Shown here in pieces: positions 1,573 to 36,590 of a stretch of 64,000 nt of DNA. Below the pieces are notes generated by a model. That model searched no databases and had not been told where the DNA came from. It saw nothing but the letters and a program-made list of their open reading frames with translations. The DNA is taken from positions 256,176-320,175 of the IMG/VR virus record IMGVR_UViG_3300031857_000002; one strand, written 5' to 3'. Within the stretch, counting starts at the first letter, position 1. Every line of letters starts with the position of its first letter. Both the position numbers and the translations under genes were made by a program.

Positions 1573-2715
1573 ATGGAAAATTATCATCCCGAAACCTATT
1601 GCACCTATGCGTTTGGTGGCTATGCCAGTCACGAAAAATGGATATGTTGTGCCGGAACAGGCCAGTTCAACAGCTTTGCCGAAGTTAACCAAAGTGAAGA
1701 AATCCAACAACTGCGGCAAGCACTACAGCGTGGTGAGCGTCATCCCACCTGTGCAGTGTGTTGGGACGCAGAAGCGGCCGGGAACGCCAGTGCCAGGTCT
1801 GTAGGATCTGCTGATCGAGACTGGCAAAGGATTCAAATTGAATTTGCAGAACCCAAACTGCGACATCTTTGGATTGACAGTGGCAGTGTATGCAACTTGG
1901 CTTGCAGAATCTGCGAACCCAGATACAGTAGCAGTCTCTACAAAGAGCACAAGGATCGATTTGGGCATACCACTGTGCCTATTACCAAGACCAATGTGGC
2001 GTATTTGATCACAGAAGACTTTAGCCAAATCGAAAACATCATGATACTAGGCGGTGAGCCATTTCTGAACCTGGACTATTGTGCTGTGTTAGAGGAAATT
2101 GTGCGCCAAGGTCGTGCTGGCCAATGTACCTTGGTGTTTTTCAGCAATGGTACTGTGCGCCCAAGTCAACGTGTGATAGATTTGCTGGCGCAGTTTTCAC
2201 AAGTGGTATTGTATTTCAGCACTGATGCTGTGGGAGACCAATTTGGGTATGTACGTACCAATGGCATCTGGTCTCAGGTCATAGACAACATCGACTACAT
2301 TGCATCGGCAAGTATTCCGCAGCTCAGGCAGAACTTTCACATAACAGTGAGCGCATTGAATGTGATGTATCTAGATGAGTTACTCTCCTGGATGGCCGAG
2401 TATTATGGTGCTGGACAAGATCCTCGTGCGGTAATTGCCCAAGCCATGAGCGAACACCGAATAACCTACATGGTAACCAATCGTCCCTCGCACTACTCGT
2501 TTGGTATTTTTACTGATGCCCAGCGTCAACAGGTATTAACACATTTGGAACATAGTGCTTTTGATCTACAAGGTATTGCAAATCAAATTACCAACTACTC
2601 CTATACACCTACACATGCTGAAAAGTTCTGGTCAGAGACTGAGTGGACCAAACAGTACCAAGGTCTAGCAGTTGAACAATACCTACCAAGGTTGGTCAAC
2701 ATCTTGCAGTCGTAA
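1573..2715 (+). CDS. Radical SAM protein with N-terminal Cys-rich (twitch/SPASM-like) segment
   Basis: CNLACRIC (CxxxCxxC), ILGGEPF, FSNG, FSTDAVG; N-terminal C..CC..CAVC; start MENY 5 nt after TAAGTA. Confidence 0.85.
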   Translation: MENYHPETYCTYAFGGYASHEKWICCAGTGQFNSFAEVNQSEEIQQLRQALQRGERHPTCAVCWDAEAAGNASARSVGSADRDWQRIQIEFAEPKLRHLWIDSGSVCNLACRICEPRYSSSLYKEHKDRFGHTTVPITKTNVAYLITEDFSQIENIMILGGEPFLNLDYCAVLEEIVRQGRAGQCTLVFFSNGTVRPSQRVIDLLAQFSQVVLYFSTDAVGDQFGYVRTNGIWSQVIDNIDYIASASIPQLRQNFHITVSALNVMYLDELLSWMAEYYGAGQDPRAVIAQAMSEHRITYMVTNRPSHYSFGIFTDAQRQQVLTHLEHSAFDLQGIANQITNYSYTPTHAEKFWSETEWTKQYQGLAVEQYLPRLVNILQS

Positions 2716-2742
2716 AAAAAGGCTGCCGTAAGCAACCTTTTT
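2716..2742. terminator. Bidirectional intrinsic terminator
   Basis: AAAAAAGGCTGCCGTAAGCAACCTTTTTT between convergent genes. Confidence 0.7.
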
Positions 2743-2776
2743 TGGTGTGACCCCTGGGATGGAGTCAGCGGGTCTA

Positions 2777-3043
2777 TTAGACCAGGCCCATGGCCATAGC
2801 TTTGTAACCAGCGGCTACTAACTTGCGGCTTGGTTTGCCAATCACATATTCTGTAACTTTAACACCATTGCCAGCCACACGCTGGTTGGCATATACTGCA
2901 AAGCCAGCTTGGCGGATGCGGCTGACTTCGGCGCTGATGTTTTTAACACCAAAACGCTTTTCAGCTTGGCTAGCTGTAACTGTCTCGCCTTTGTGCAAAG
3001 CAGAGAACAATTTGTAAGTTTTTGTTTCAGGATTGAATCGCAT
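2777..3043 (-). CDS. Small helix-turn-helix DNA-binding protein
   Basis: VTASQAEKRFGVKNISAEVSRIRQAG is HTH-like; start at MRFN. Confidence 0.55.
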   Translation of the reverse strand: MRFNPETKTYKLFSALHKGETVTASQAEKRFGVKNISAEVSRIRQAGFAVYANQRVAGNGVKVTEYVIGKPSRKLVAAGYKAMAMGLV

Positions 3044-30946: not shown

Positions 30947-31405
30947 TTAGGAAGTGTATGTGATAGCAATAGTCTTTGGCTTGGCTTCTTCAGGTATTTC
31001 ACGCTTTAGGTGAATGCTTAGGATACCAAGTTCAAGATGTGCTCCGGTAATTTCCACATGGTCCGCTAGTTGGAATTCTCTACGGAAACTACGCTCACTG
31101 ATTCCTTTGTGCAGGTATTTTGCAGTCGAATCTTCATTCTCCACAGTTTCACGACTGTGCTTGCCTTCAATAACCAAGATTTTTTTATCCTTGGTCACTG
31201 ACAGATTGTCGTAGCCAAAACCAGCCACAGCCACGCTGATCATGTACTCGTCATCATTGACTTGTACAATATCATAAGGTGGATAGTTTGTTGAGCTTTG
31301 TTGAGCATTTACACGCATGAGTTCATCAAACATGTTATCAAACCCGATACCAAATTTGGTGAGTGCGGGAATGTCGAAAGAGCGAAGGGTGAGAGTTTTT
31401 GTCAT
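30947..31405 (-). CDS. Small heat-shock protein Hsp20 (IbpA-like)
   Basis: NYPPYDI, AVAGF, YLHKGISERSFRREF.L, A.LELGIL.I.L. Confidence 0.95.
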   Translation of the reverse strand: MTKTLTLRSFDIPALTKFGIGFDNMFDELMRVNAQQSSTNYPPYDIVQVNDDEYMISVAVAGFGYDNLSVTKDKKILVIEGKHSRETVENEDSTAKYLHKGISERSFRREFQLADHVEITGAHLELGILSIHLKREIPEEAKPKTIAITYTS

Positions 31406-31412
31406 TTGTTTT

Positions 31413-31476
31413 CTCCTTTATTAAGCAAGATGACTTGTGATGTAGCCCCACTATGGGCACTACAAATATATTTATA
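31413..31476 (-). promoter_or_regulatory. T4-type late promoter and ROSE-like 5' UTR of hsp20
   Basis: TATAAATA (31469-31476), 5' hairpin (31441-31464), CUUGCU-UAAUAA-AGGAG hairpin with bulged G opposite SD. Confidence 0.6.
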
Positions 31477-31495
31477 CAGGAAATCTCAACTGTTG

Positions 31496-31714
31496 TCAAG
31501 ACTTTTCGATATTTTTTATTGTGTAATCACATGCCGTCCAGGTCATGGTAAAAAGAGTAAAATGCTCTGGTTGATTTAGGCCAAGTCGATATTTTAAACC
31601 CTTGGCAACTTTGGTTGTGTAAGGTACCTTGTGACGATTAGCCCAGGCACTGACTGTATCTTTGAGACTGTCAAAACTGTCCATGCTTGTGACAATGTCA
31701 AACTCTATGTACAT
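31496..31714 (-). CDS. Hypothetical protein
   Basis: 72 aa, coupled to rpsU stop. Confidence 0.6.
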   Translation of the reverse strand: MYIEFDIVTSMDSFDSLKDTVSAWANRHKVPYTTKVAKGLKYRLGLNQPEHFTLFTMTWTACDYTIKNIEKS

Positions 31715-31938
31715 TAGAACTGTTTTTTAGGCAACTCTTGCTCACGTAGTTTTTTACGCCAACGTTGTTTGGCTGCTGATGCCTTGAGTTTGCGTTGAGT
31801 TGTGGGTTTGATATAAAATTCACGCTCTCTTAGATCATTTAACAATCCATCAGCTTGAATTTTCTTTTTGAATTTGCGCAATGCTTTTTCTACATTGCCA
31901 TCTGTGACTAGTACCGATCTTCCGTGTAATTTTTCCAT
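31714..31938 (-). CDS. rpsU: Ribosomal protein bS21
   Basis: V.V.DGNVEKALRKFKKK....G...DLREREFYIKPT..RK...AA..RW.KK. Confidence 0.92.
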   Translation of the reverse strand: MEKLHGRSVLVTDGNVEKALRKFKKKIQADGLLNDLREREFYIKPTTQRKLKASAAKQRWRKKLREQELPKKQF

Positions 31939-31945
31939 AAATGCA

Positions 31946-33136
31946 TTAGAGCTCCTTAGGACTATTTACCAGGGCTTGATCAATATCTACGTGCTTAATT
32001 CCGTCTGTGCGATAACGTGCTAGATTGTACATGTGCGGCAACAACACACGTTCTAGTTCTGAATGCAGGCCACGAGCGCCTGTTTTGTTTTTGATTGTGC
32101 GTTCTGCAATGAGATCCAGGCTGTCTGCAGTAAACTCAAGGTCAACTTCGTCTTGCTTGAACAACCACTGGTACTGACTTATGTAATTGTGCTTGACTTC
32201 ATTAAGGATACGTACCAGGGCTGTTTTATCCAGCTCTTTGAGCGCAACCCAAGCAGGGAAGCGACCTACAAATTCTGGGATTAATCCAAATCGCACTAGG
32301 TCATCTGGCGTGGTCTTTGACAGGTGTAACTGCCCGTCTGTTTTGCTAGAAACTTCTGCACCAAATCCAATGTTGGTGCCTTGCACACGACTCTTGACAA
32401 TGTTGTCTAGTCCAACAAATGCACCGCCTGCAATGAACAAGATGTTTGTGGTGTCAATTTCAATAGTGTCGCCCGACGGGTGTTTTCTGCCACCAGTGGG
32501 CATGACTCTACACTTGGTGCCTTCTACCAGTTTGAGCAAGGCTTGTTGTACGCCCTCGCCTGACACATCTCTTGTGATACTGGTGCCTTCGCTCTTACGA
32601 GAGATCTTGTCAATCTCGTCCACAAACACAATACCACGTTGTGTTTTGTCAACATCGCCGCCCGCGGCAGCATACAATCGACTGATCAAACTTTCAACAT
32701 CATCGCCCACATAGCCTGCTTCTGTTAGGCTAGTAGCATCTGCAATCACAAATGGCACATCTAAATAACGTGCCACAGTTTTGGCCAGTAATGTTTTGCC
32801 TGACCCTGTTGGACCAAGCATGAGAATGTTAGCTTTTTCAATTTCAGTGTTAGGGTCTTTGTTACGAATGCGTTTGTAGTGATTGGCAATGGCCACACTC
32901 AGCAACATCTTGGCATCGTCTTGTCCAATCACATATTGATCCAAATGCTTTCGAATTTCTCTTGGATCAAGATTGGGCGAAGCATCTGATATTTCAGGTT
33001 TATCTACCAACAGTGTTTGGCACAAGTCCACACACTCATTGCATATTGCAACACCTTCACCCACAATGAGTTTAGTCACTGTGTCTTTGTGTTTGTTACA
33101 AAAACTACAGGTGTCAAGATTATCGGATGTTTTCAT
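31946..33136 (-). CDS. clpX: Clp ATPase ClpX
   Basis: Zn finger [50 protein letters not shown]. Confidence 0.97.
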
Positions 33137-34653
33137 GTATTATTTGTTTTGGTTTGTAAACGTTGTGCCACTTGTTCTTGTTCGCTGGCGCTGAGTAAGT
33201 CAACATCATATGTGCCACTATTGATTTTGTCAATGAGGTGATCAATGTATGCTGTATCGTAAGTATAGTTATCTGCTGTGGCTTTGTCAACTAAAATCCA
33301 ACGATTGCCGTTGAATTTGAACAATTGATTTGGTGCTACATCTGTACGCACAAAACTGTCGCCACGTGCAGGAGCAGTAGGGAATGTGTTACCAAAGCTG
33401 GAGTTAGGGGCAGGCTTGAGATACTGCATCCATGGTAGCTCTGTTATCTCGCCACGCTCTAACATGTTGCGTTGACCCTTTAGTGTTTCGCCTGGATTGA
33501 GCTCTTTCCAGTGTTGCATTGCCGCTTTTTCTTCTGGCGTGCCGTAGTCGATAATTTCTGTTTCAAAACTAGGCATGTCAACATACACTGGTTCGCCGAT
33601 GGGCTCAGATTTAGCAACCATGGGTTTGAGATTTTCAAAATGTACAAACGGCTTGTCTAAGTACGCATGGCGGCCGCGGTCAAACTCTGTTTTTAATTCT
33701 TCTACTTCTTCTTCAGTTGAAGGATATGTTGTTGTGGTAGTGTTGTACATCCAACCTGGTGGTGATGGATCTGTGCGTATCATCCAGTCTGGATGGTCTT
33801 GGGCCACTGTTTGTTTTATCTGATCAATCTGCTCAGTAGTCAATGGACCATCGTCTGGGGGATATGCAGGCTCGTCGTGTACAAATCCACCCCGGCCTTG
33901 TCGTGCCCATTCAAACTGTTTGTTAGCGGCAAGAATGAGTGTGAGTGCTAGTGGATCAAACACCAGCACAATCATGATAATAACAAGACGTACTGCTTTT
34001 TCTAACACATTGGCATCTGGATTATCACCGTAAACCAGGGCCGCAATGTATTTTACAGGACCAACCTCGGCTTCAATCTTGCGGAACTCTGCTGCCAGCG
34101 GCGCCCGTTCTTCACTAAGCGTAGTAATCGTTTTTTGCTCGGCCGAGATTTCAGCAAGGAGACGCCCACGTTCCTTTTGTTGAGACCTACGGAGAGCCAC
34201 GGACTTATCTGCCCCCGTTTCTGATGTACTTCGGCCCATGACTTGGTCAACTGCCTCATCCATCTGTTTAAGCGCCTTGCGGTTAACATCTATATTTTCC
34301 TTTGCAATCTTAATTTTTTCATCATATATAGCAACCTTGCTTATAGAGTCACCAGACACTAGACTTTGATCACTGTGTGCCTTTGACAAGTATCCAAAAA
34401 TACCCATTGATGTCAACAACATAAGGAATGCCACAGCAGGTATTAAGTATGCTTTGAATGCCCACCCTGCTCGTTTCCAGTTGTTGTGCAACCACACAGT
34501 GGCCACAATCTTGCCAAGCTCTAAACTGCCACCCATGATGATCACAGGTATGGTTGCAGCCGAGAAAATGGCTGTGAGGCCTGCTACTGAATAATAGGCA
34601 GCCACAATGCTCAGTAGCAGAGCTGTGGCCAATATGCTGAAACCAAATATCAT
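33133..34653 (-). CDS. Membrane protein with coiled-coil and acidic C-terminal region
   Basis: Three N-terminal TMs, heptad region, further TM ([12 protein letters not shown]). Confidence 0.7.
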
Positions 34654-34658
34654 AGTCT

Positions 34659-34979
34659 TTATTTACCGGGATTTTTTACCACTATCACAGCGTGTTTAAC
34701 TGCGCACCAGGTAGCAAACGACGGATCTGGCACTTCAAACCAAACGTAATTTTCTACACGATTTCTTTCCCACGCAAACTTTTCTAGTTTGCGTCGTACT
34801 CTAGGCTGGCCTTTCCAGCCATTGTGACCATATAGTGTAGTAGCTTCTTTCATGATTGCGTACCAAGTTTCGGTATCACGCAAATCAAACCAAATACGGT
34901 GCATGACCAAGGGCGTTGATTCAAGCGAGCTGAGTGACGCAGACATACTCGACGCAGAGGTCTCTGTTTCAACAGACAT
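34659..34979 (-). CDS. Hypothetical protein
   Basis: 106 aa, SD AAGGA, downstream of structured leader. Confidence 0.65.
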   Translation of the reverse strand: MSVETETSASSMSASLSSLESTPLVMHRIWFDLRDTETWYAIMKEATTLYGHNGWKGQPRVRRKLEKFAWERNRVENYVWFEVPDPSFATWCAVKHAVIVVKNPGK

Positions 34980-35012
34980 TAAAAATATCCTTTCACTGTG
35001 TTAATCCCTAAT

Positions 35013-35158
35013 GAGCATACTCCCGGGTATCAATCGGGGTTTGGACGAATCCAGGGACAGTGTCGCAACCTATGTGACTGACGTTCACATGCCACGGTAG
35101 TAGCAGGCCTAGGAACCCCACCACACCATTGAACAGCACCATCTCCCTGATCATGCTC
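35013..35158 (-). ncRNA. Candidate structured, pseudoknotted ncRNA or cis-regulatory leader (unassigned family)
   Basis: Terminal GAGCAU/AUGCUC helix, 11-bp bulged helix, three-way junction, GGGGUU/AACCCC pseudoknot; 5' end coincides with predicted TSS. Confidence 0.55.
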
Positions 35159-35162
35159 TATA

Positions 35163-35191
35163 ATTATAACAACATGATCCAGTGCTGTCAA
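35163..35191 (-). promoter_or_regulatory. sigma70-type promoter
   Basis: TTGACA-17-TATAAT, perfect consensus. Confidence 0.85.
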
Positions 35192-35689: not shown

Positions 35690-36376
35690 TTATTTCCGGT
35701 CACCAAACAACTGCAACAAGTTCAAGAACAAGTTGATAAAGTCCATGTACAAGGTCAGTGCTCCGCGCACTTCTGCTGAATCGTTGGTCTCTATACTCAG
35801 TTCCTCACGGATTTTCTGAGTGTCATAAGCGGTTAAGCCAAGAAAGATGATAATAGCTAGGGCAGAGATCACCATCTGCATCACTGTTGATCCGATAAAG
35901 ATATTCACAATGCTAGCAATCACAATGGCAATCAAGCCCACAAACATAAACTTACCAACACTGTCTAGACTCTGTTTAGTAAAGTAGCCATAGCCGCTCA
36001 TTACGCCAAACAAGATGCCTGCACCCATGAAAGCACTCACAATCGATCCCATGGTAAACACAGCAAAGATCATGGCAAAGCTCAGACCCATCAATGCCGC
36101 AAAACCATGTAGGCATAACTGTGCCACACCCTTGCTGGGGTTATTGGCCAGCACATAGCCTACACCAAAGATGGCTGCCAGTGGTGAAAAGATCACAATC
36201 CATTTCAACCAACCTGTAAAAAAGAATGCCAGCAACTCTGGACTGGATCCCACAAAGTAACTCACAAACATCGATACAATCACAGCCAGACTCATGTGTC
36301 CATACACACGACCCATTGCTGAGTTAACTTCGCTTGCAGAACGATAAGCACCGCTATTATAAGTTGTTTCAAACAT
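35690..36376 (-). CDS. Bax inhibitor-1/YccA family membrane protein
   Basis: ~7 TM; MGRVY..M, FIGLIAIVIAS..N.F, LTAYDTQKI, AL.LYMDFINLFL.LL.L.G. Confidence 0.92.
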   Translation of the reverse strand: MFETTYNSGAYRSASEVNSAMGRVYGHMSLAVIVSMFVSYFVGSSPELLAFFFTGWLKWIVIFSPLAAIFGVGYVLANNPSKGVAQLCLHGFAALMGLSFAMIFAVFTMGSIVSAFMGAGILFGVMSGYGYFTKQSLDSVGKFMFVGLIAIVIASIVNIFIGSTVMQMVISALAIIIFLGLTAYDTQKIREELSIETNDSAEVRGALTLYMDFINLFLNLLQLFGDRK

Positions 36377-36377
36377 G

Positions 36378-36590
36378 TTAATCATCCCTTTCCATTTCTG
36401 TAGTTTCCTTGATCAAGGCCTGCAGTTGTTCCAGAGTAGGAACCATGAGTTTGACTGTTTTGTAATCACCCTCACTGTCGCGACCCGACACTTCAATCAT
36501 GTACGCATTGTCGTACATGTACACTGTGAACGATTCATTGGCCTTGGCCAACTTGTCGCTGATTTTATTTACTGTTTTAGTCTTTGCCAT
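36378..36590 (-). CDS. Hypothetical protein
   Basis: 70 aa, SD AGGA. Confidence 0.65.
   Translation of the reverse strand: MAKTKTVNKISDKLAKANESFTVYMYDNAYMIEVSGRDSEGDYKTVKLMVPTLEQLQALIKETTEMERDD

What the first reader, a model, noticed from the sequence alone, without database searches (positions are those of the whole stretch)
35013..35191. Unannotated ~146-nt pseudoknotted RNA behind a perfect sigma70 promoter
Seen (minus strand): TTGACA-17-TATAAT puts the TSS at about 35157. P1 GAGCAU/AUGCUC joins the two ends. P2 CAGGG-(AG)-AUGGUG (35149-35137) pairs with CACUGUCCCUG (35062-35052). GGCCU/AGGUU closes two abutting hairpins (GCUAC-UACC-GUGGC; AUGUGA-7nt-UCACAU). A UUCG loop follows. GGGGUU (35119-35114) inside P2 pairs with AACCCC (35041-35036) outside it, forming a pseudoknot. 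I cannot match it to tRNA, tmRNA, RNase P, SRP, 6S or common riboswitch/ribozyme consensuses. It could be a trans sRNA, ribozyme or riboswitch for 34659-34979. Caveat: a 48-codon near-leaderless ORF (35008-35154) spans the same bases.
Basis: partly seen in the sequence, partly recalled or inferred. Interest (0 to 1): 0.85.

Follow-up and report, generated by a model that had tools for sequence, protein, structure and literature searches.

The report
New pseudoknotted leader RNA, jumbo phages

Summary
The element is a genuine, conserved, structured non-coding RNA. I collected 95 distinct homologues from 172 viral and metagenomic loci, plus four more divergent lineages. All lie at the 5' end of the same operon: unknown 106-aa protein, membrane protein, ClpX. 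Covariation supports a hairpin domain (P2a/P2b/P3), a three-way junction (P4, P5, closing helix P6 that ends 1 nt before the Shine-Dalgarno sequence), and a different pseudoknot (GGCA 35093-35090 with UGCU 35017-35014). With this fold 93.8% of cells pair, against 33-46% in slid controls, and 25 of 38 pairs show double changes. The 48-codon ORF is broken by stops in most homologues. Rfam 15 gives no match, and GenBank phages hold no relative. Most likely it is a cis-acting leader, either riboswitch-like or a protein operator; this function is inferred, not shown. In the two main lineages the P3 loop carries palindromes that change sequence but stay palindromic. That is the signature of symmetric kissing-loop dimers in OLE and GOLLD RNAs. 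Verdict: new family of a known kind, interest about 0.6.

The parts
35186..35191 (-). -35 hexamer TTGACA
   Evidence: Across 82 distinct upstream regions of homologues it is TTGACA in 70.
35163..35168 (-). -10 hexamer TATAAT, 17-nt spacer, TG extension
   Evidence: TATAAT in 76 of 82 and a 17-nt spacer in 76 of 82. Exactly 6 nt separate the -10 from the conserved GCAUG in 81 of 82. This puts the start of the RNA at about 35156 (inferred, not mapped).
35140..35156 (-). 5' segment GCAUGAUCAGGGAGAUG (RNA positions 1-17; window coordinate = 35157 minus position)
Evidence: Conservation begins exactly here. CAGGG can pair with CCCUG (35056-35052) as an alternative to P6. This is supported in lineage A only (permutation p = 0.0015; lineage B p = 0.9).
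35137..35139 (-). P2a 5' strand GUG, pairs with CAC 35076-35074
   Evidence: 100% paired. The middle pair is UA 43, GC 42, AU 8, UG 2. Other lineages have GGAG/CUCC, GGGG/CCCC, CUAGG/CCUAG.
35131..35135 (-). P2b 5' strand UGUUC, pairs with GAACG 35086-35082
   Evidence: Three of five pairs show double changes: CG 63 / UA 31; UA 81 / CG 14; GC 85 / UA 5. Divergent lineages have GGUU/AACC, UGAC/GUCA, CCGAU/AUCGG.
35096..35127 (-). P3 hairpin: GG...CC closing pairs, GUGGUGGG (35124-35117) with CCUGCUAC (35107-35100), 9-nt loop 35116-35108
   Evidence: The closing pair is GC 67 / AU 28 with none broken. Five of six main pairs show double changes.
35108..35113 (-). Palindrome CCUAGG in the P3 loop (candidate symmetric kissing site)
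   Evidence: 25 of 29 clade representatives have a strict palindrome of 6 nt or more in this loop, against 5.5 expected from shuffles. Variants at this site: CCUAGG, CCCGGG, ACCGGU, UCCGGA, CUCGAG. A second site, absent from the window, has AUCGAU, AGAUCU, UAGCUA, AUUCGAAU, AAUGAUCAUU and others. Absent in lineages C-F.
35090..35093 (-). Pseudoknot 5' strand GGCA, within the invariant CCGUGGCA
   Evidence: Pairs with UGCU 35017-35014; 99.2% paired. The fourth pair is A-U in lineages A and B, U-A in D and F (compensatory), and mismatched in C and E.
35061..35072 (-). Near-invariant linker UAGGUUGCGACA
   Evidence: Invariant or nearly invariant columns. Lineages C-F have AAGG-UGUGGCAC.
35053..35062 (-). 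P6 5' strand: CACUGU + CCCU
   Evidence: Pairs with AGGG (35009-35006) and ACAGUG (34999-34994). Compensatory versions: CCUU/AAGG, CUCUG/CAGAG, CCAA/UUGG, CCUC/GAGG, CCAC/GUGG, CUUC/GAAG. Own-versus-swapped duplex test p <= 0.0005 in lineages A and B. Adding P6 to the model raises the scores of lineages C and D from about 20 to about 30 bits.
35043..35052 (-). P4 hairpin GGA-UUCG-UCC
   Evidence: All five modelled pairs show double changes; 97.7% paired. It is longer, and mostly capped by GNRA loops, in other lineages.
35039..35042 (-). Junction J4/5: AAAC (AAAAC in most homologues)
   Evidence: Invariant A115, A116, A117 and C119.
35022..35038 (-). P5 hairpin CCCG (35038-35035) with CGGG (35025-35022)
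   Evidence: Four of five pairs show double changes, e.g. CUCAG/CUGAG, CCUGGG/CCCAGG. The loop YUGRUAC is replaced by GNRA loops in some homologues.
35010..35021 (-). Junction J5/6: AGUAUGCUCAUU, including the pseudoknot 3' strand UGCU (35017-35014)
   Evidence: G135, G137, A139, U140 and G141 are invariant.
34994..35009 (-). P6 3' strand: AGGG, an AUUAAC bulge, then ACAGUG
   Evidence: See the P6 5' strand. The helix ends 1 nt before the Shine-Dalgarno sequence AAAGGA.
34988..34993 (-). Shine-Dalgarno sequence AAAGGA
   Evidence: Conserved AAAGG, 8-9 nt before the ATG, in lineages A and B.
34659..34979 (-). Gene X: 106-aa protein of unknown function, first gene after the leader
   Evidence: No Pfam or PHROG match. 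83 relatives, none usefully named: 'hypothetical protein' apart from one source label, 'DUF924 family'. AlphaFold model pLDDT 77, alpha/beta sandwich; no significant PDB match, best E = 0.13.

Best explanation
This is the structured 5' leader of an operon of a large uncultured phage, and it belongs to an RNA family that is not in Rfam.

Shown: a conserved sigma70-type promoter sits a fixed 6 nt upstream of the conserved RNA. The RNA (about 35156-34994, minus strand) folds into two parts. One is a long hairpin arm (P2a, P2b, P3). The other is a three-way junction (P4, P5 and closing helix P6). A 4-bp pseudoknot joins them: GGCA in the P2b/P3 internal loop pairs with UGCU in the J5/6 junction strand. 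The junction and linker nucleotides are near-invariant and the peripheral stems vary freely. The element always lies at the 5' end of the same operon: X, a roughly 500-aa membrane protein, ClpX and, in the window, bS21 and Hsp20. P6 ends 1 nt before the ribosome-binding site.

Inferred: the fold is a sensor or operator domain, binding a small molecule or a protein (possibly X itself). It would set translation or stability of the operon mRNA by stabilising or releasing P6. In lineage A the 5' CAGGG segment could compete with the P6 3' strand for the same CCCUG segment.

Inferred: in lineages A and B the palindromic P3 loop lets two copies pair loop to loop.

The confidence given (0.5) is for the cis-regulatory function. 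That the element is a real, conserved, structured non-coding RNA with this fold I hold at about 0.95.
For: Homologues and context: 95 distinct sequences from 172 loci, all directly 5' of the X gene. Divergent lineages C-F, found through distant X homologues, keep the element at the operon start.

Structure: 96.5% of cells paired with 20 of 31 pairs showing double changes. With P6 and the pseudoknot, 93.8% paired with 25 of 38. Slid controls give 33-48%, and 0 of 500 shuffles reach the observed values.

Strand: 169 G.U cells against 28 A.C cells.

Promoter conservation and fixed spacing. There is one copy in the 64-kb window, at 162.7 bits.

Not coding: the first stop falls at codons 6-37 in most homologues.

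P6 covaries: p <= 0.0005.

The pattern of conserved junctions with variable, GNRA-capped stems is what riboswitch aptamers show; that comparison rests on established knowledge.

No terminator-like site was found between the RNA and the ATG.
Against: No ligand, protein partner or transcript has been observed.

The operon genes give no metabolic clue.

The Shine-Dalgarno sequence itself is not inside any covarying helix. Thermodynamic folds give no consistent occlusion of it.

The competing 5' pairing is not kept in lineages B and E.

In lineages C-F about 50 nt separate P6 from the start codon.

One X homologue (L232) has only 65 nt upstream and no leader.

In L220 and L221 another ORF lies between the leader and X.

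The alignments used for the counts were fitted to the model, which biases them towards it.
Confidence: 0.5

Rival explanations
1. It is a stand-alone or processed non-coding RNA that acts in trans, for example a dimeric scaffold or sponge like the phage-associated ornate RNAs. Its position before gene X would then merely reflect shared use of a strong promoter.
For: It has a very strong conserved promoter. Its fold is compact and self-contained, closed by P6. Palindrome-to-palindrome covariation in the P3 loop is the signature used to support cross-chain kissing loops in OLE and GOLLD (bioRxiv 10.1101/2024.12.08.627333, section 6, read). The leader stays at the 5' end of the operon even where another ORF separates it from X.
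Against: No terminator or conserved processing signal lies between P6 and the Shine-Dalgarno sequence. The element is never found away from this operon. The palindromes are missing in lineages C-F.
Confidence: 0.2
2. It is a constitutive 5' structure that only stabilises the mRNA or enhances translation, for instance by protecting the 5' end or acting as a ribosome standby site. It would sense nothing.
For: The Shine-Dalgarno sequence is left outside the helices. No alternative pairing is conserved across the whole family.
Against: Simple stabilisers do not need about 45 invariant positions, many of them in unpaired junctions and linkers, a pseudoknot and a three-way junction kept across lineages whose X proteins are only 40-60% identical.
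Confidence: 0.15
3. It is a self-cleaving ribozyme of an undescribed class that processes the 5' end of the operon mRNA.
For: It has a compact pseudoknotted fold with invariant junction nucleotides. Self-cleaving ribozymes are common in phage genomes (established knowledge).
Against: No match to any ribozyme family in Rfam 15, even at E <= 10, for three lineages. No recognisable cleavage-site architecture is present.
Confidence: 0.05
4. The bases encode the 48-aa near-leaderless peptide 35008-35154, and the conservation is protein-coding.
For: The ORF is open in the window and in its closest relatives, at 48-50 codons.
Against: In most of the 95 homologues the frame stops at codons 6-37. Insertions and deletions fall in the loops of the helices. 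Substitutions are compensatory in pairs rather than synonymous.
Confidence: 0.02

Closest known systems
Riboswitch aptamers and orphan riboswitch candidates in bacterial and phage 5' UTRs
   Same: It lies in the 5' UTR directly behind a promoter. It has a multi-helix junction plus a pseudoknot. Unpaired junction nucleotides are near-invariant, while peripheral stems vary and are capped by GNRA or UUCG loops. The closing helix abuts the ribosome-binding site.
   Different: It matches no Rfam family. No ligand is known and the downstream genes are not metabolic. No terminator or Shine-Dalgarno-sequestering helix is conserved. It is restricted to one clade of uncultured phages.
OLE, GOLLD and ROOL 'ornate' RNAs (Kretsch et al., bioRxiv 10.1101/2024.12.08.627333)
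   Same: It is phage-associated. A hairpin loop changes from one palindrome to another, the signature taken there as evidence of symmetric cross-chain kissing loops (GGCC to GAUC or AGCU in OLE L9.3).
   Different: Those RNAs are much larger (GOLLD often exceeds 800 nt) and stand alone, often near tRNA islands, and their multimers have been solved by cryo-EM. This RNA is about 165 nt and fused to an mRNA. Its palindromes occur only in two lineages, and dimerisation is untested.
HIV-1 dimerisation initiation site
   Same: In the window, a 9-nt apical loop holds a 6-nt palindrome (recalled knowledge, not tested here).
   Different: The sequence and context are unrelated. Here the palindrome sits at the 3' edge of the loop, and a second palindrome is present in most homologues.
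Candidate cis-regulatory structured RNAs of phages (Fremin, Bhatt and Kyrpides 2023, PMC10690425)
   Same: That screen used the same kind of data (IMG/VR intergenic regions) and predicted structures consistently positioned upstream of one gene, such as those before GP20 and GP32.
   Different: Those 8,495 candidates average 67 nt, with a maximum of 151 nt. Their supplementary lists were not available to me, so I cannot tell whether part of this element is among them.

Membership tests
Any Rfam 15 family | Covariance-model match at the gathering score, or at least a suggestive E-value | tested here: not met
   No hit at gathering score in the whole window. At E <= 10 the only hit is mir-2012, at 18.4 bits against a gathering score of 90. 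Lineages B and C give nothing.
Riboswitch | Conserved structured domain in a 5' UTR, supported by covariation | tested here: met
   Position relative to the promoter and ATG.
Riboswitch | Direct, selective binding of a small molecule or ion | not testable with these tools
   Needs in-line probing, ITC or similar. The gene context gives no candidate ligand.
Riboswitch | Expression platform: mutually exclusive pairings that gate a terminator or the ribosome-binding site | tested here: inconclusive
   The 5' CAGGG segment and the P6 3' strand compete for CCCUG in lineage A (p = 0.0015) but not in lineage B (p = 0.9). The Shine-Dalgarno sequence is not inside a covarying helix. No terminator is present.
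Symmetric kissing-loop homodimer RNAs (as in OLE L9.3 and GOLLD L21a) | A loop palindrome that covaries from palindrome to palindrome | tested here: met
   25 of 29 clades have a strict palindrome of 6 nt or more, against 5.5 expected. There are at least 5 sequence variants at one site and about 10 at the other. This holds only in lineages A and B.
Symmetric kissing-loop homodimer RNAs | Physical dimer formation | not testable with these tools
   Needs native gels, SEC-MALS or cryo-EM. Self-duplex energies of the loops were not distinguishable from shuffles (mean z = -0.36).
Small ORF or leader peptide | Reading frame conserved among homologues | tested here: not met
   Stops at codons 6-37 in most homologues.
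RNA thermometer (ROSE or fourU type) | Shine-Dalgarno sequence or AUG held in an imperfect hairpin, with little sequence conservation | tested here: not met
   The Shine-Dalgarno sequence lies outside all covarying helices, and the element has about 45 invariant positions. The downstream ClpX and Hsp20 genes made this worth considering.
tRNA, tmRNA | ARAGORN detection | tested here: not met
   No genes found in the window.
Sigma70-type promoter | Consensus hexamers and spacing, conserved in homologues | tested here: met
   12/12 match, conserved in 70-76 of 82 upstream regions. Activity and the transcription start site were not measured.

The most novel reading that the evidence does not exclude
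This is a previously undescribed riboswitch-like sensor RNA of large phages. It controls a phage-encoded proteostasis and translation operon (ClpX, ribosomal protein bS21, Hsp20). In most lineages it works as a symmetric homodimer, joined by one or two covarying palindromic kissing loops. That would be a small mRNA-borne relative, in principle, of the multimeric OLE, GOLLD and ROOL RNAs.
Probability: 0.2. Interest if true: 0.85.

Novelty: new member of a known kind. Interest (0 to 1): 0.6.

Why it matters
Complex, covariation-supported RNA folds with near-invariant junction nucleotides are usually riboswitches, ribozymes or specific protein-binding sites. New ones of this size are uncommon, and few are known from phages.

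This one is specific to a widespread clade of uncultured lake phages with genomes up to about 330 kb. It heads an operon that includes ClpX, ribosomal protein bS21 and Hsp20. It may therefore show how such phages time or tune their takeover of host proteostasis and translation.

The palindromic loops offer a simple, testable case of natural RNA homodimerisation, which has rarely been documented.

The RNA is driven by a consensus sigma70-type promoter and is only about 165 nt long. It should therefore be suitable for ordinary tests in E. coli and in vitro.

Tried and rejected

2. End-joining P1 (GCAUG/UAUGC). It is invariant in lineages A and B, so it could not be tested there. It has three uncompensated breaks (GCACG in L046 and L116; GGAUGC in L013). 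It is not kept in lineages C-F. I replaced it with the GGCA/UGCY pseudoknot, which has 3-4 bp in all six lineages and one compensatory A-U to U-A switch.

3. Pairing of the P3 loop CCUA with the UAGG of the linker. It fits only where the loop is CCUAGG, so it was rejected in favour of the palindrome reading.

4. Thermodynamic evidence. The folding-energy z-score is 0.11. Partition-function accessibility of the Shine-Dalgarno sequence and AUG is inconsistent between lineages. Neither is informative.

5. A naive all-against-all column-pair scan: swamped by G/U-rich chance helices.

6. Genome-collection scan. Of seven pattern hits, one is real: L094, a 70-kb contig in a MAG labelled Haliscomenobacter. 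Five others gave no covariance-model hit, and L093 was rejected by motif and not run through the model.

7. A weak second model hit about 740 nt downstream in some loci lies inside the coding region of the membrane protein and was dismissed.

8. GenBank phages. There is no DNA or protein relative of the leader or of X. Cultured phages that share the N-terminal half of the membrane protein (XacN1, Pelagibacter phage Mosig) lack the RNA. XacN1 ORF243 is not an X homologue.

9. Protein X gave no functional lead from Pfam, PHROGs or Foldseek against the PDB.

10. The supplementary lists of Fremin et al. 2023 are not held, so prior listing could not be checked.

Full report
**What is in the sequence**

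All genes around the finding are on the minus strand. The 225-nt gap lies between the stop of a 160-aa ORF (35205) and the ATG of a 106-aa ORF (34979). It holds TTGACA (35191-35186), a 17-nt spacer with a TG extension, and TATAAT (35168-35163), a 12/12 match. The region is not unusually stable: the minimum free energy is -47.4 kcal/mol against -47.85 for shuffles, z = 0.11. Rfam 15 finds nothing in the 64-kb window at gathering scores. At E <= 10 it finds only a meaningless mir-2012 hit. ARAGORN finds no tRNA or tmRNA.

**Relatives**

The window is part of a 320-kb IMG/VR contig. A search with the downstream protein gave 26 viral loci. The upstream DNA there is far better conserved than the protein, which is 50-60% identical in many loci, and the promoter is conserved too. 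I then scanned the collections with a 19-base pattern taken from invariant positions.
- Viral contigs gave 62 stretches.
- Genome contigs gave seven stretches, of which one is real. It lies on a 70-kb contig binned into a Haliscomenobacter MAG. Five of the other six gave no covariance-model hit. The sixth, L093, failed the motif filter and was not run through the model.

After filtering there are 95 distinct full-length sequences from 172 loci. Every one lies directly 5' of the same gene, which starts ATGTCTGTTGAAA or ATGACTGTC. GenBank phages hold no DNA or protein relative.

The promoter is conserved across 82 distinct upstream regions:
- TTGACA in 70
- TATAAT in 76
- a 17-nt spacer in 76
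- exactly 6 nt between the -10 and the conserved GCAUG in 81

The RNA therefore starts at about 35156. This is inferred, not mapped.

**Coding or RNA**

The 48-codon frame is open only in the window's own clade. In most of the 95 sequences the first stop falls at codon 6-37. Length differences sit in helix loops, and substitutions come in compensatory pairs. Among paired cells, G.U outnumbers A.C by 169 to 28, so the transcribed minus strand is the one that folds. The ORF reading is rejected.

**The fold**

RNA position p corresponds to window coordinate 35157 - p. I derived the fold from RNAalifold, inspection, and two covariance models (R1, R2) used to realign the sequences.

| Element | 5' strand | 3' strand |
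|---|---|---|
| P2a | GUG 35139-35137 | CAC 35076-35074 |
| P2b | UGUUC 35135-35131 | GAACG 35086-35082 |
| P3 | GG 35127-35126, GUGGUGGG 35124-35117 | CCUGCUAC 35107-35100, CC 35097-35096 |
| Pseudoknot | GGCA 35093-35090 | UGCU 35017-35014 |
| P6 | CACUGU 35062-35057, CCCU 35056-35053 | AGGG 35009-35006, ACAGUG 34999-34994 |
| P4 | GGA 35052-35050 | UCC 35045-35043 (loop UUCG) |
| P5 | CCCG 35038-35035 | CGGG 35025-35022 |

The P3 loop is 9 nt (35116-35108).

On the 95-sequence alignment the nested helices pair in 96.5% of cells, and 20 of 31 pairs show double changes. Slid controls give 37-48%, and 0 of 500 shuffles reach the observed values. With P6 and the pseudoknot added, and with divergent members included, 38 pairs give 93.8% paired and 25 pairs show double changes. 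Slid controls give 33-46%. These alignments were fitted to the model, which favours it, but the margins are large. Many of the compensatory changes are also visible in the plain MAFFT alignment.

The unpaired segments CCGUGGCA, UAGGUUGMGACA, AAAAC and GRGUAUGC are invariant or nearly so. P4 and P5 vary in length and are often capped by GNRA or UUCG loops.

- GCUAC does not pair with GUGGC. That helix is 82% paired with no double change. GCUAC is the 3' strand of P3.
- The AUGUGA/UCACAU hairpin is 77% paired, with 31-36 broken cells in three of its pairs. Its GAAC belongs to P2b and its CAC to P2a.
- The pseudoknot GGGGUU/AACCCC is 63% and 40% paired. GGGG is P3 and CCCC is P5.
- The UUCG hairpin is P4 and is correct.
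- The long P2 (CAGGG-AG-AUGGUG with CACUGUCCCUG) is 75% paired. It conflicts with both P2a and P6.
- Its CAGGG/CCCUG half does track in lineage A (own-versus-swapped duplex test p = 0.0015) but not in lineage B (p = 0.9).
- P6 tracks in both lineages (p <= 0.0005). Independent versions include CCUU/AAGG, CUCUG/CAGAG, CCAA/UUGG, CCUC/GAGG, CCAC/GUGG and CUUC/GAAG.

**Divergent lineages**

A profile search with protein X found 87 clusters at 50% identity. Their contigs and earlier look-ups yielded four further leader types, C to F. They keep the architecture with new sequences:
- P2b: GGUU/AACC, UGAC/GUCA, CCGAU/AUCGG
- P2a: GGAG/CUCC, GGGG/CCCC, CUAGG/CCUAG
- P4 is long and P5 is expanded
- P6: CACC...UCC with GGGG...GGUG, and CAC-UUU...UCCC with GGGA...AAA-G-GUG

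Adding P6 to the model raises the scores of types C and D from about 20 to about 30 bits.

These lineages also decide between the two possible partners of the J5/6 strand. The pseudoknot keeps GGC/GCC everywhere.

Three observations limit a strictly RBS-coupled mechanism:
- In types C-F about 50 nt separate P6 from the start codon.
- In L220 and L221 a 247-aa ORF lies between the leader and X.
- In L232 the gap upstream of X is only 65 nt and there is no leader.

**P3 loop palindromes**

In lineages A and B the apical loop of P3 ends with a 6-nt palindrome. The variants are CCUAGG (as in the window), CCCGGG, ACCGGU, UCCGGA and CUCGAG, with CCUGGG as a wobble form. Most members have a second palindrome upstream of it: AUCGAU, GAUCGAUC, AGAUCU, AAAGAUCUUU, AAUGAUCAUU, AUUCGAAU, UGAUCA or UAGCUA.

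Of 29 clade representatives, 25 have at least one strict palindrome of 6 nt or more, against 5.5 expected from shuffled loops. A spacer-less palindrome cannot pair within one chain. Kretsch et al. used exactly this palindrome-to-palindrome covariation (GGCC to GAUC or AGCU) to support symmetric cross-chain kissing loops in OLE and GOLLD (bioRxiv 10.1101/2024.12.08.627333, section 6). I infer that these leaders can dimerise loop to loop. This is untested. Loop self-duplex energies were not distinctive, and lineages C-F lack the palindromes, so dimerisation cannot be the core function.

**Context**

Downstream of the leader the window encodes, in order:
- X (34659-34979). It has no Pfam or PHROG match. 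The AlphaFold model has pLDDT 77 and is a beta-alpha-beta sandwich with no significant PDB neighbour.
- A 506-aa membrane protein (33133-34653).
- ClpX (31946-33136).
- Ribosomal protein bS21 (31714-31938; Pfam E = 9e-18).
- A 72-aa ORF.
- Hsp20 (30947-31405).

A Bax1-I-family membrane protein and a DNA ligase lie upstream. The order X, membrane protein, ClpX is kept in distant relatives. No terminator-like site lies between the RNA and the ATG. The covariance model finds only one copy in the window.

**Interpretation**

The existence, boundaries, strand, fold and non-coding nature of the element are shown. Its function is inferred. I consider a cis-acting sensor or operator leader most likely (about 0.5). 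The reasons are its fixed position behind the promoter at the head of one operon, its aptamer-like conservation pattern, and a closing helix that abuts the ribosome-binding site in the main lineages. Rivals are a processed trans-acting or scaffold RNA (0.2), a purely stabilising 5' structure (0.15), a new self-cleaving ribozyme (0.05) and the small ORF (0.02).

**Novelty**

There is no Rfam match for three lineages and no cultured-phage relative. A large screen of IMG/VR intergenic regions reported 8,495 candidate structured RNAs of at most 151 nt (PMC10690425). Its lists were not available, so a partial prior listing cannot be excluded. I rate this a new family of a known kind (structured leader RNA), with a less likely but more interesting reading as a dimeric phage riboswitch.

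Noticed in passing
window 30947-33136 (minus strand): The operon behind the leader continues with a phage ClpX (31946-33136), ribosomal protein bS21 (31714-31938; Pfam E = 9e-18), a 72-aa ORF and an Hsp20 (30947-31405). A Bax1-I-family membrane protein (35690-36385) lies just upstream. Together these form a proteostasis and translation cluster in a phage. Kretsch et al. mention a hypothesis that OLE RNA sequesters S21 (RpsU); any link to this RNA is pure speculation.
   Followed up: partly
L220:1936-3279 and L221: In this divergent lineage the leader and the first ~15 codons of gene X are followed by a stop. A 247-aa ORF with no Pfam match (2257-3000) comes next, and the rest of X follows it. 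This looks like an insertion into the start of X.
   Followed up: no
L094 (NZ_JBBAKG010000031.1, 70-kb contig): A full copy of the leader and gene X lies on a contig binned into a MAG labelled Haliscomenobacter sp. It is probably a phage contig binned with the MAG, or a hint about the host. The TTGACA/TATAAT promoter is not the Bacteroidota type (my own knowledge).
   Followed up: no
window 33205-33290 (minus strand): Two more near-consensus sigma70-like promoters (TTGACA-17-TATACT and TTGACA-17-TATGAT) lie inside the 3' end of the 506-aa gene, just upstream of ClpX. They may be internal promoters.
   Followed up: no
L216:2950-3000, L230:470-540, L228:1270-1310: Leader types C-F carry about 50 extra nt between P6 and the start codon. 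This stretch has features of its own: a GAGAUCUC palindrome in type C, and a GCCGGC-GAGAA-GCCGGC hairpin in type D. No obvious Shine-Dalgarno sequence is present.
   Followed up: no
L194:1423-1566, L047:684-827, L027:4212-4355: Weak covariance-model hits (12-25 bits) lie about 740 nt downstream of the leader, inside the coding region of the membrane-protein homologue. They are probably chance.
   Followed up: partly
window 33133-34653 (minus strand): The N-terminal half of the 506-aa membrane protein has homologues (28-42% identity) in cultured phages, mostly jumbo: Xanthomonas XacN1 and Xoo-sp13, Ralstonia RsoM2USA, Salicola SCTP-2, Stenotrophomonas CM1, Pelagibacter Mosig. Neither gene X nor the leader occurs there.
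   Followed up: partly
window 34977-34940 (minus strand): The first codons of X (AUGUCUGUUGAAACAGAG) form a small hairpin (UCUGU-UGAA-ACAGA) in the window. The 5' coding sequence of X is unusually conserved at the nucleotide level in lineages A and B. Lineages C-F lack this N-terminal extension of the protein.
   Followed up: no
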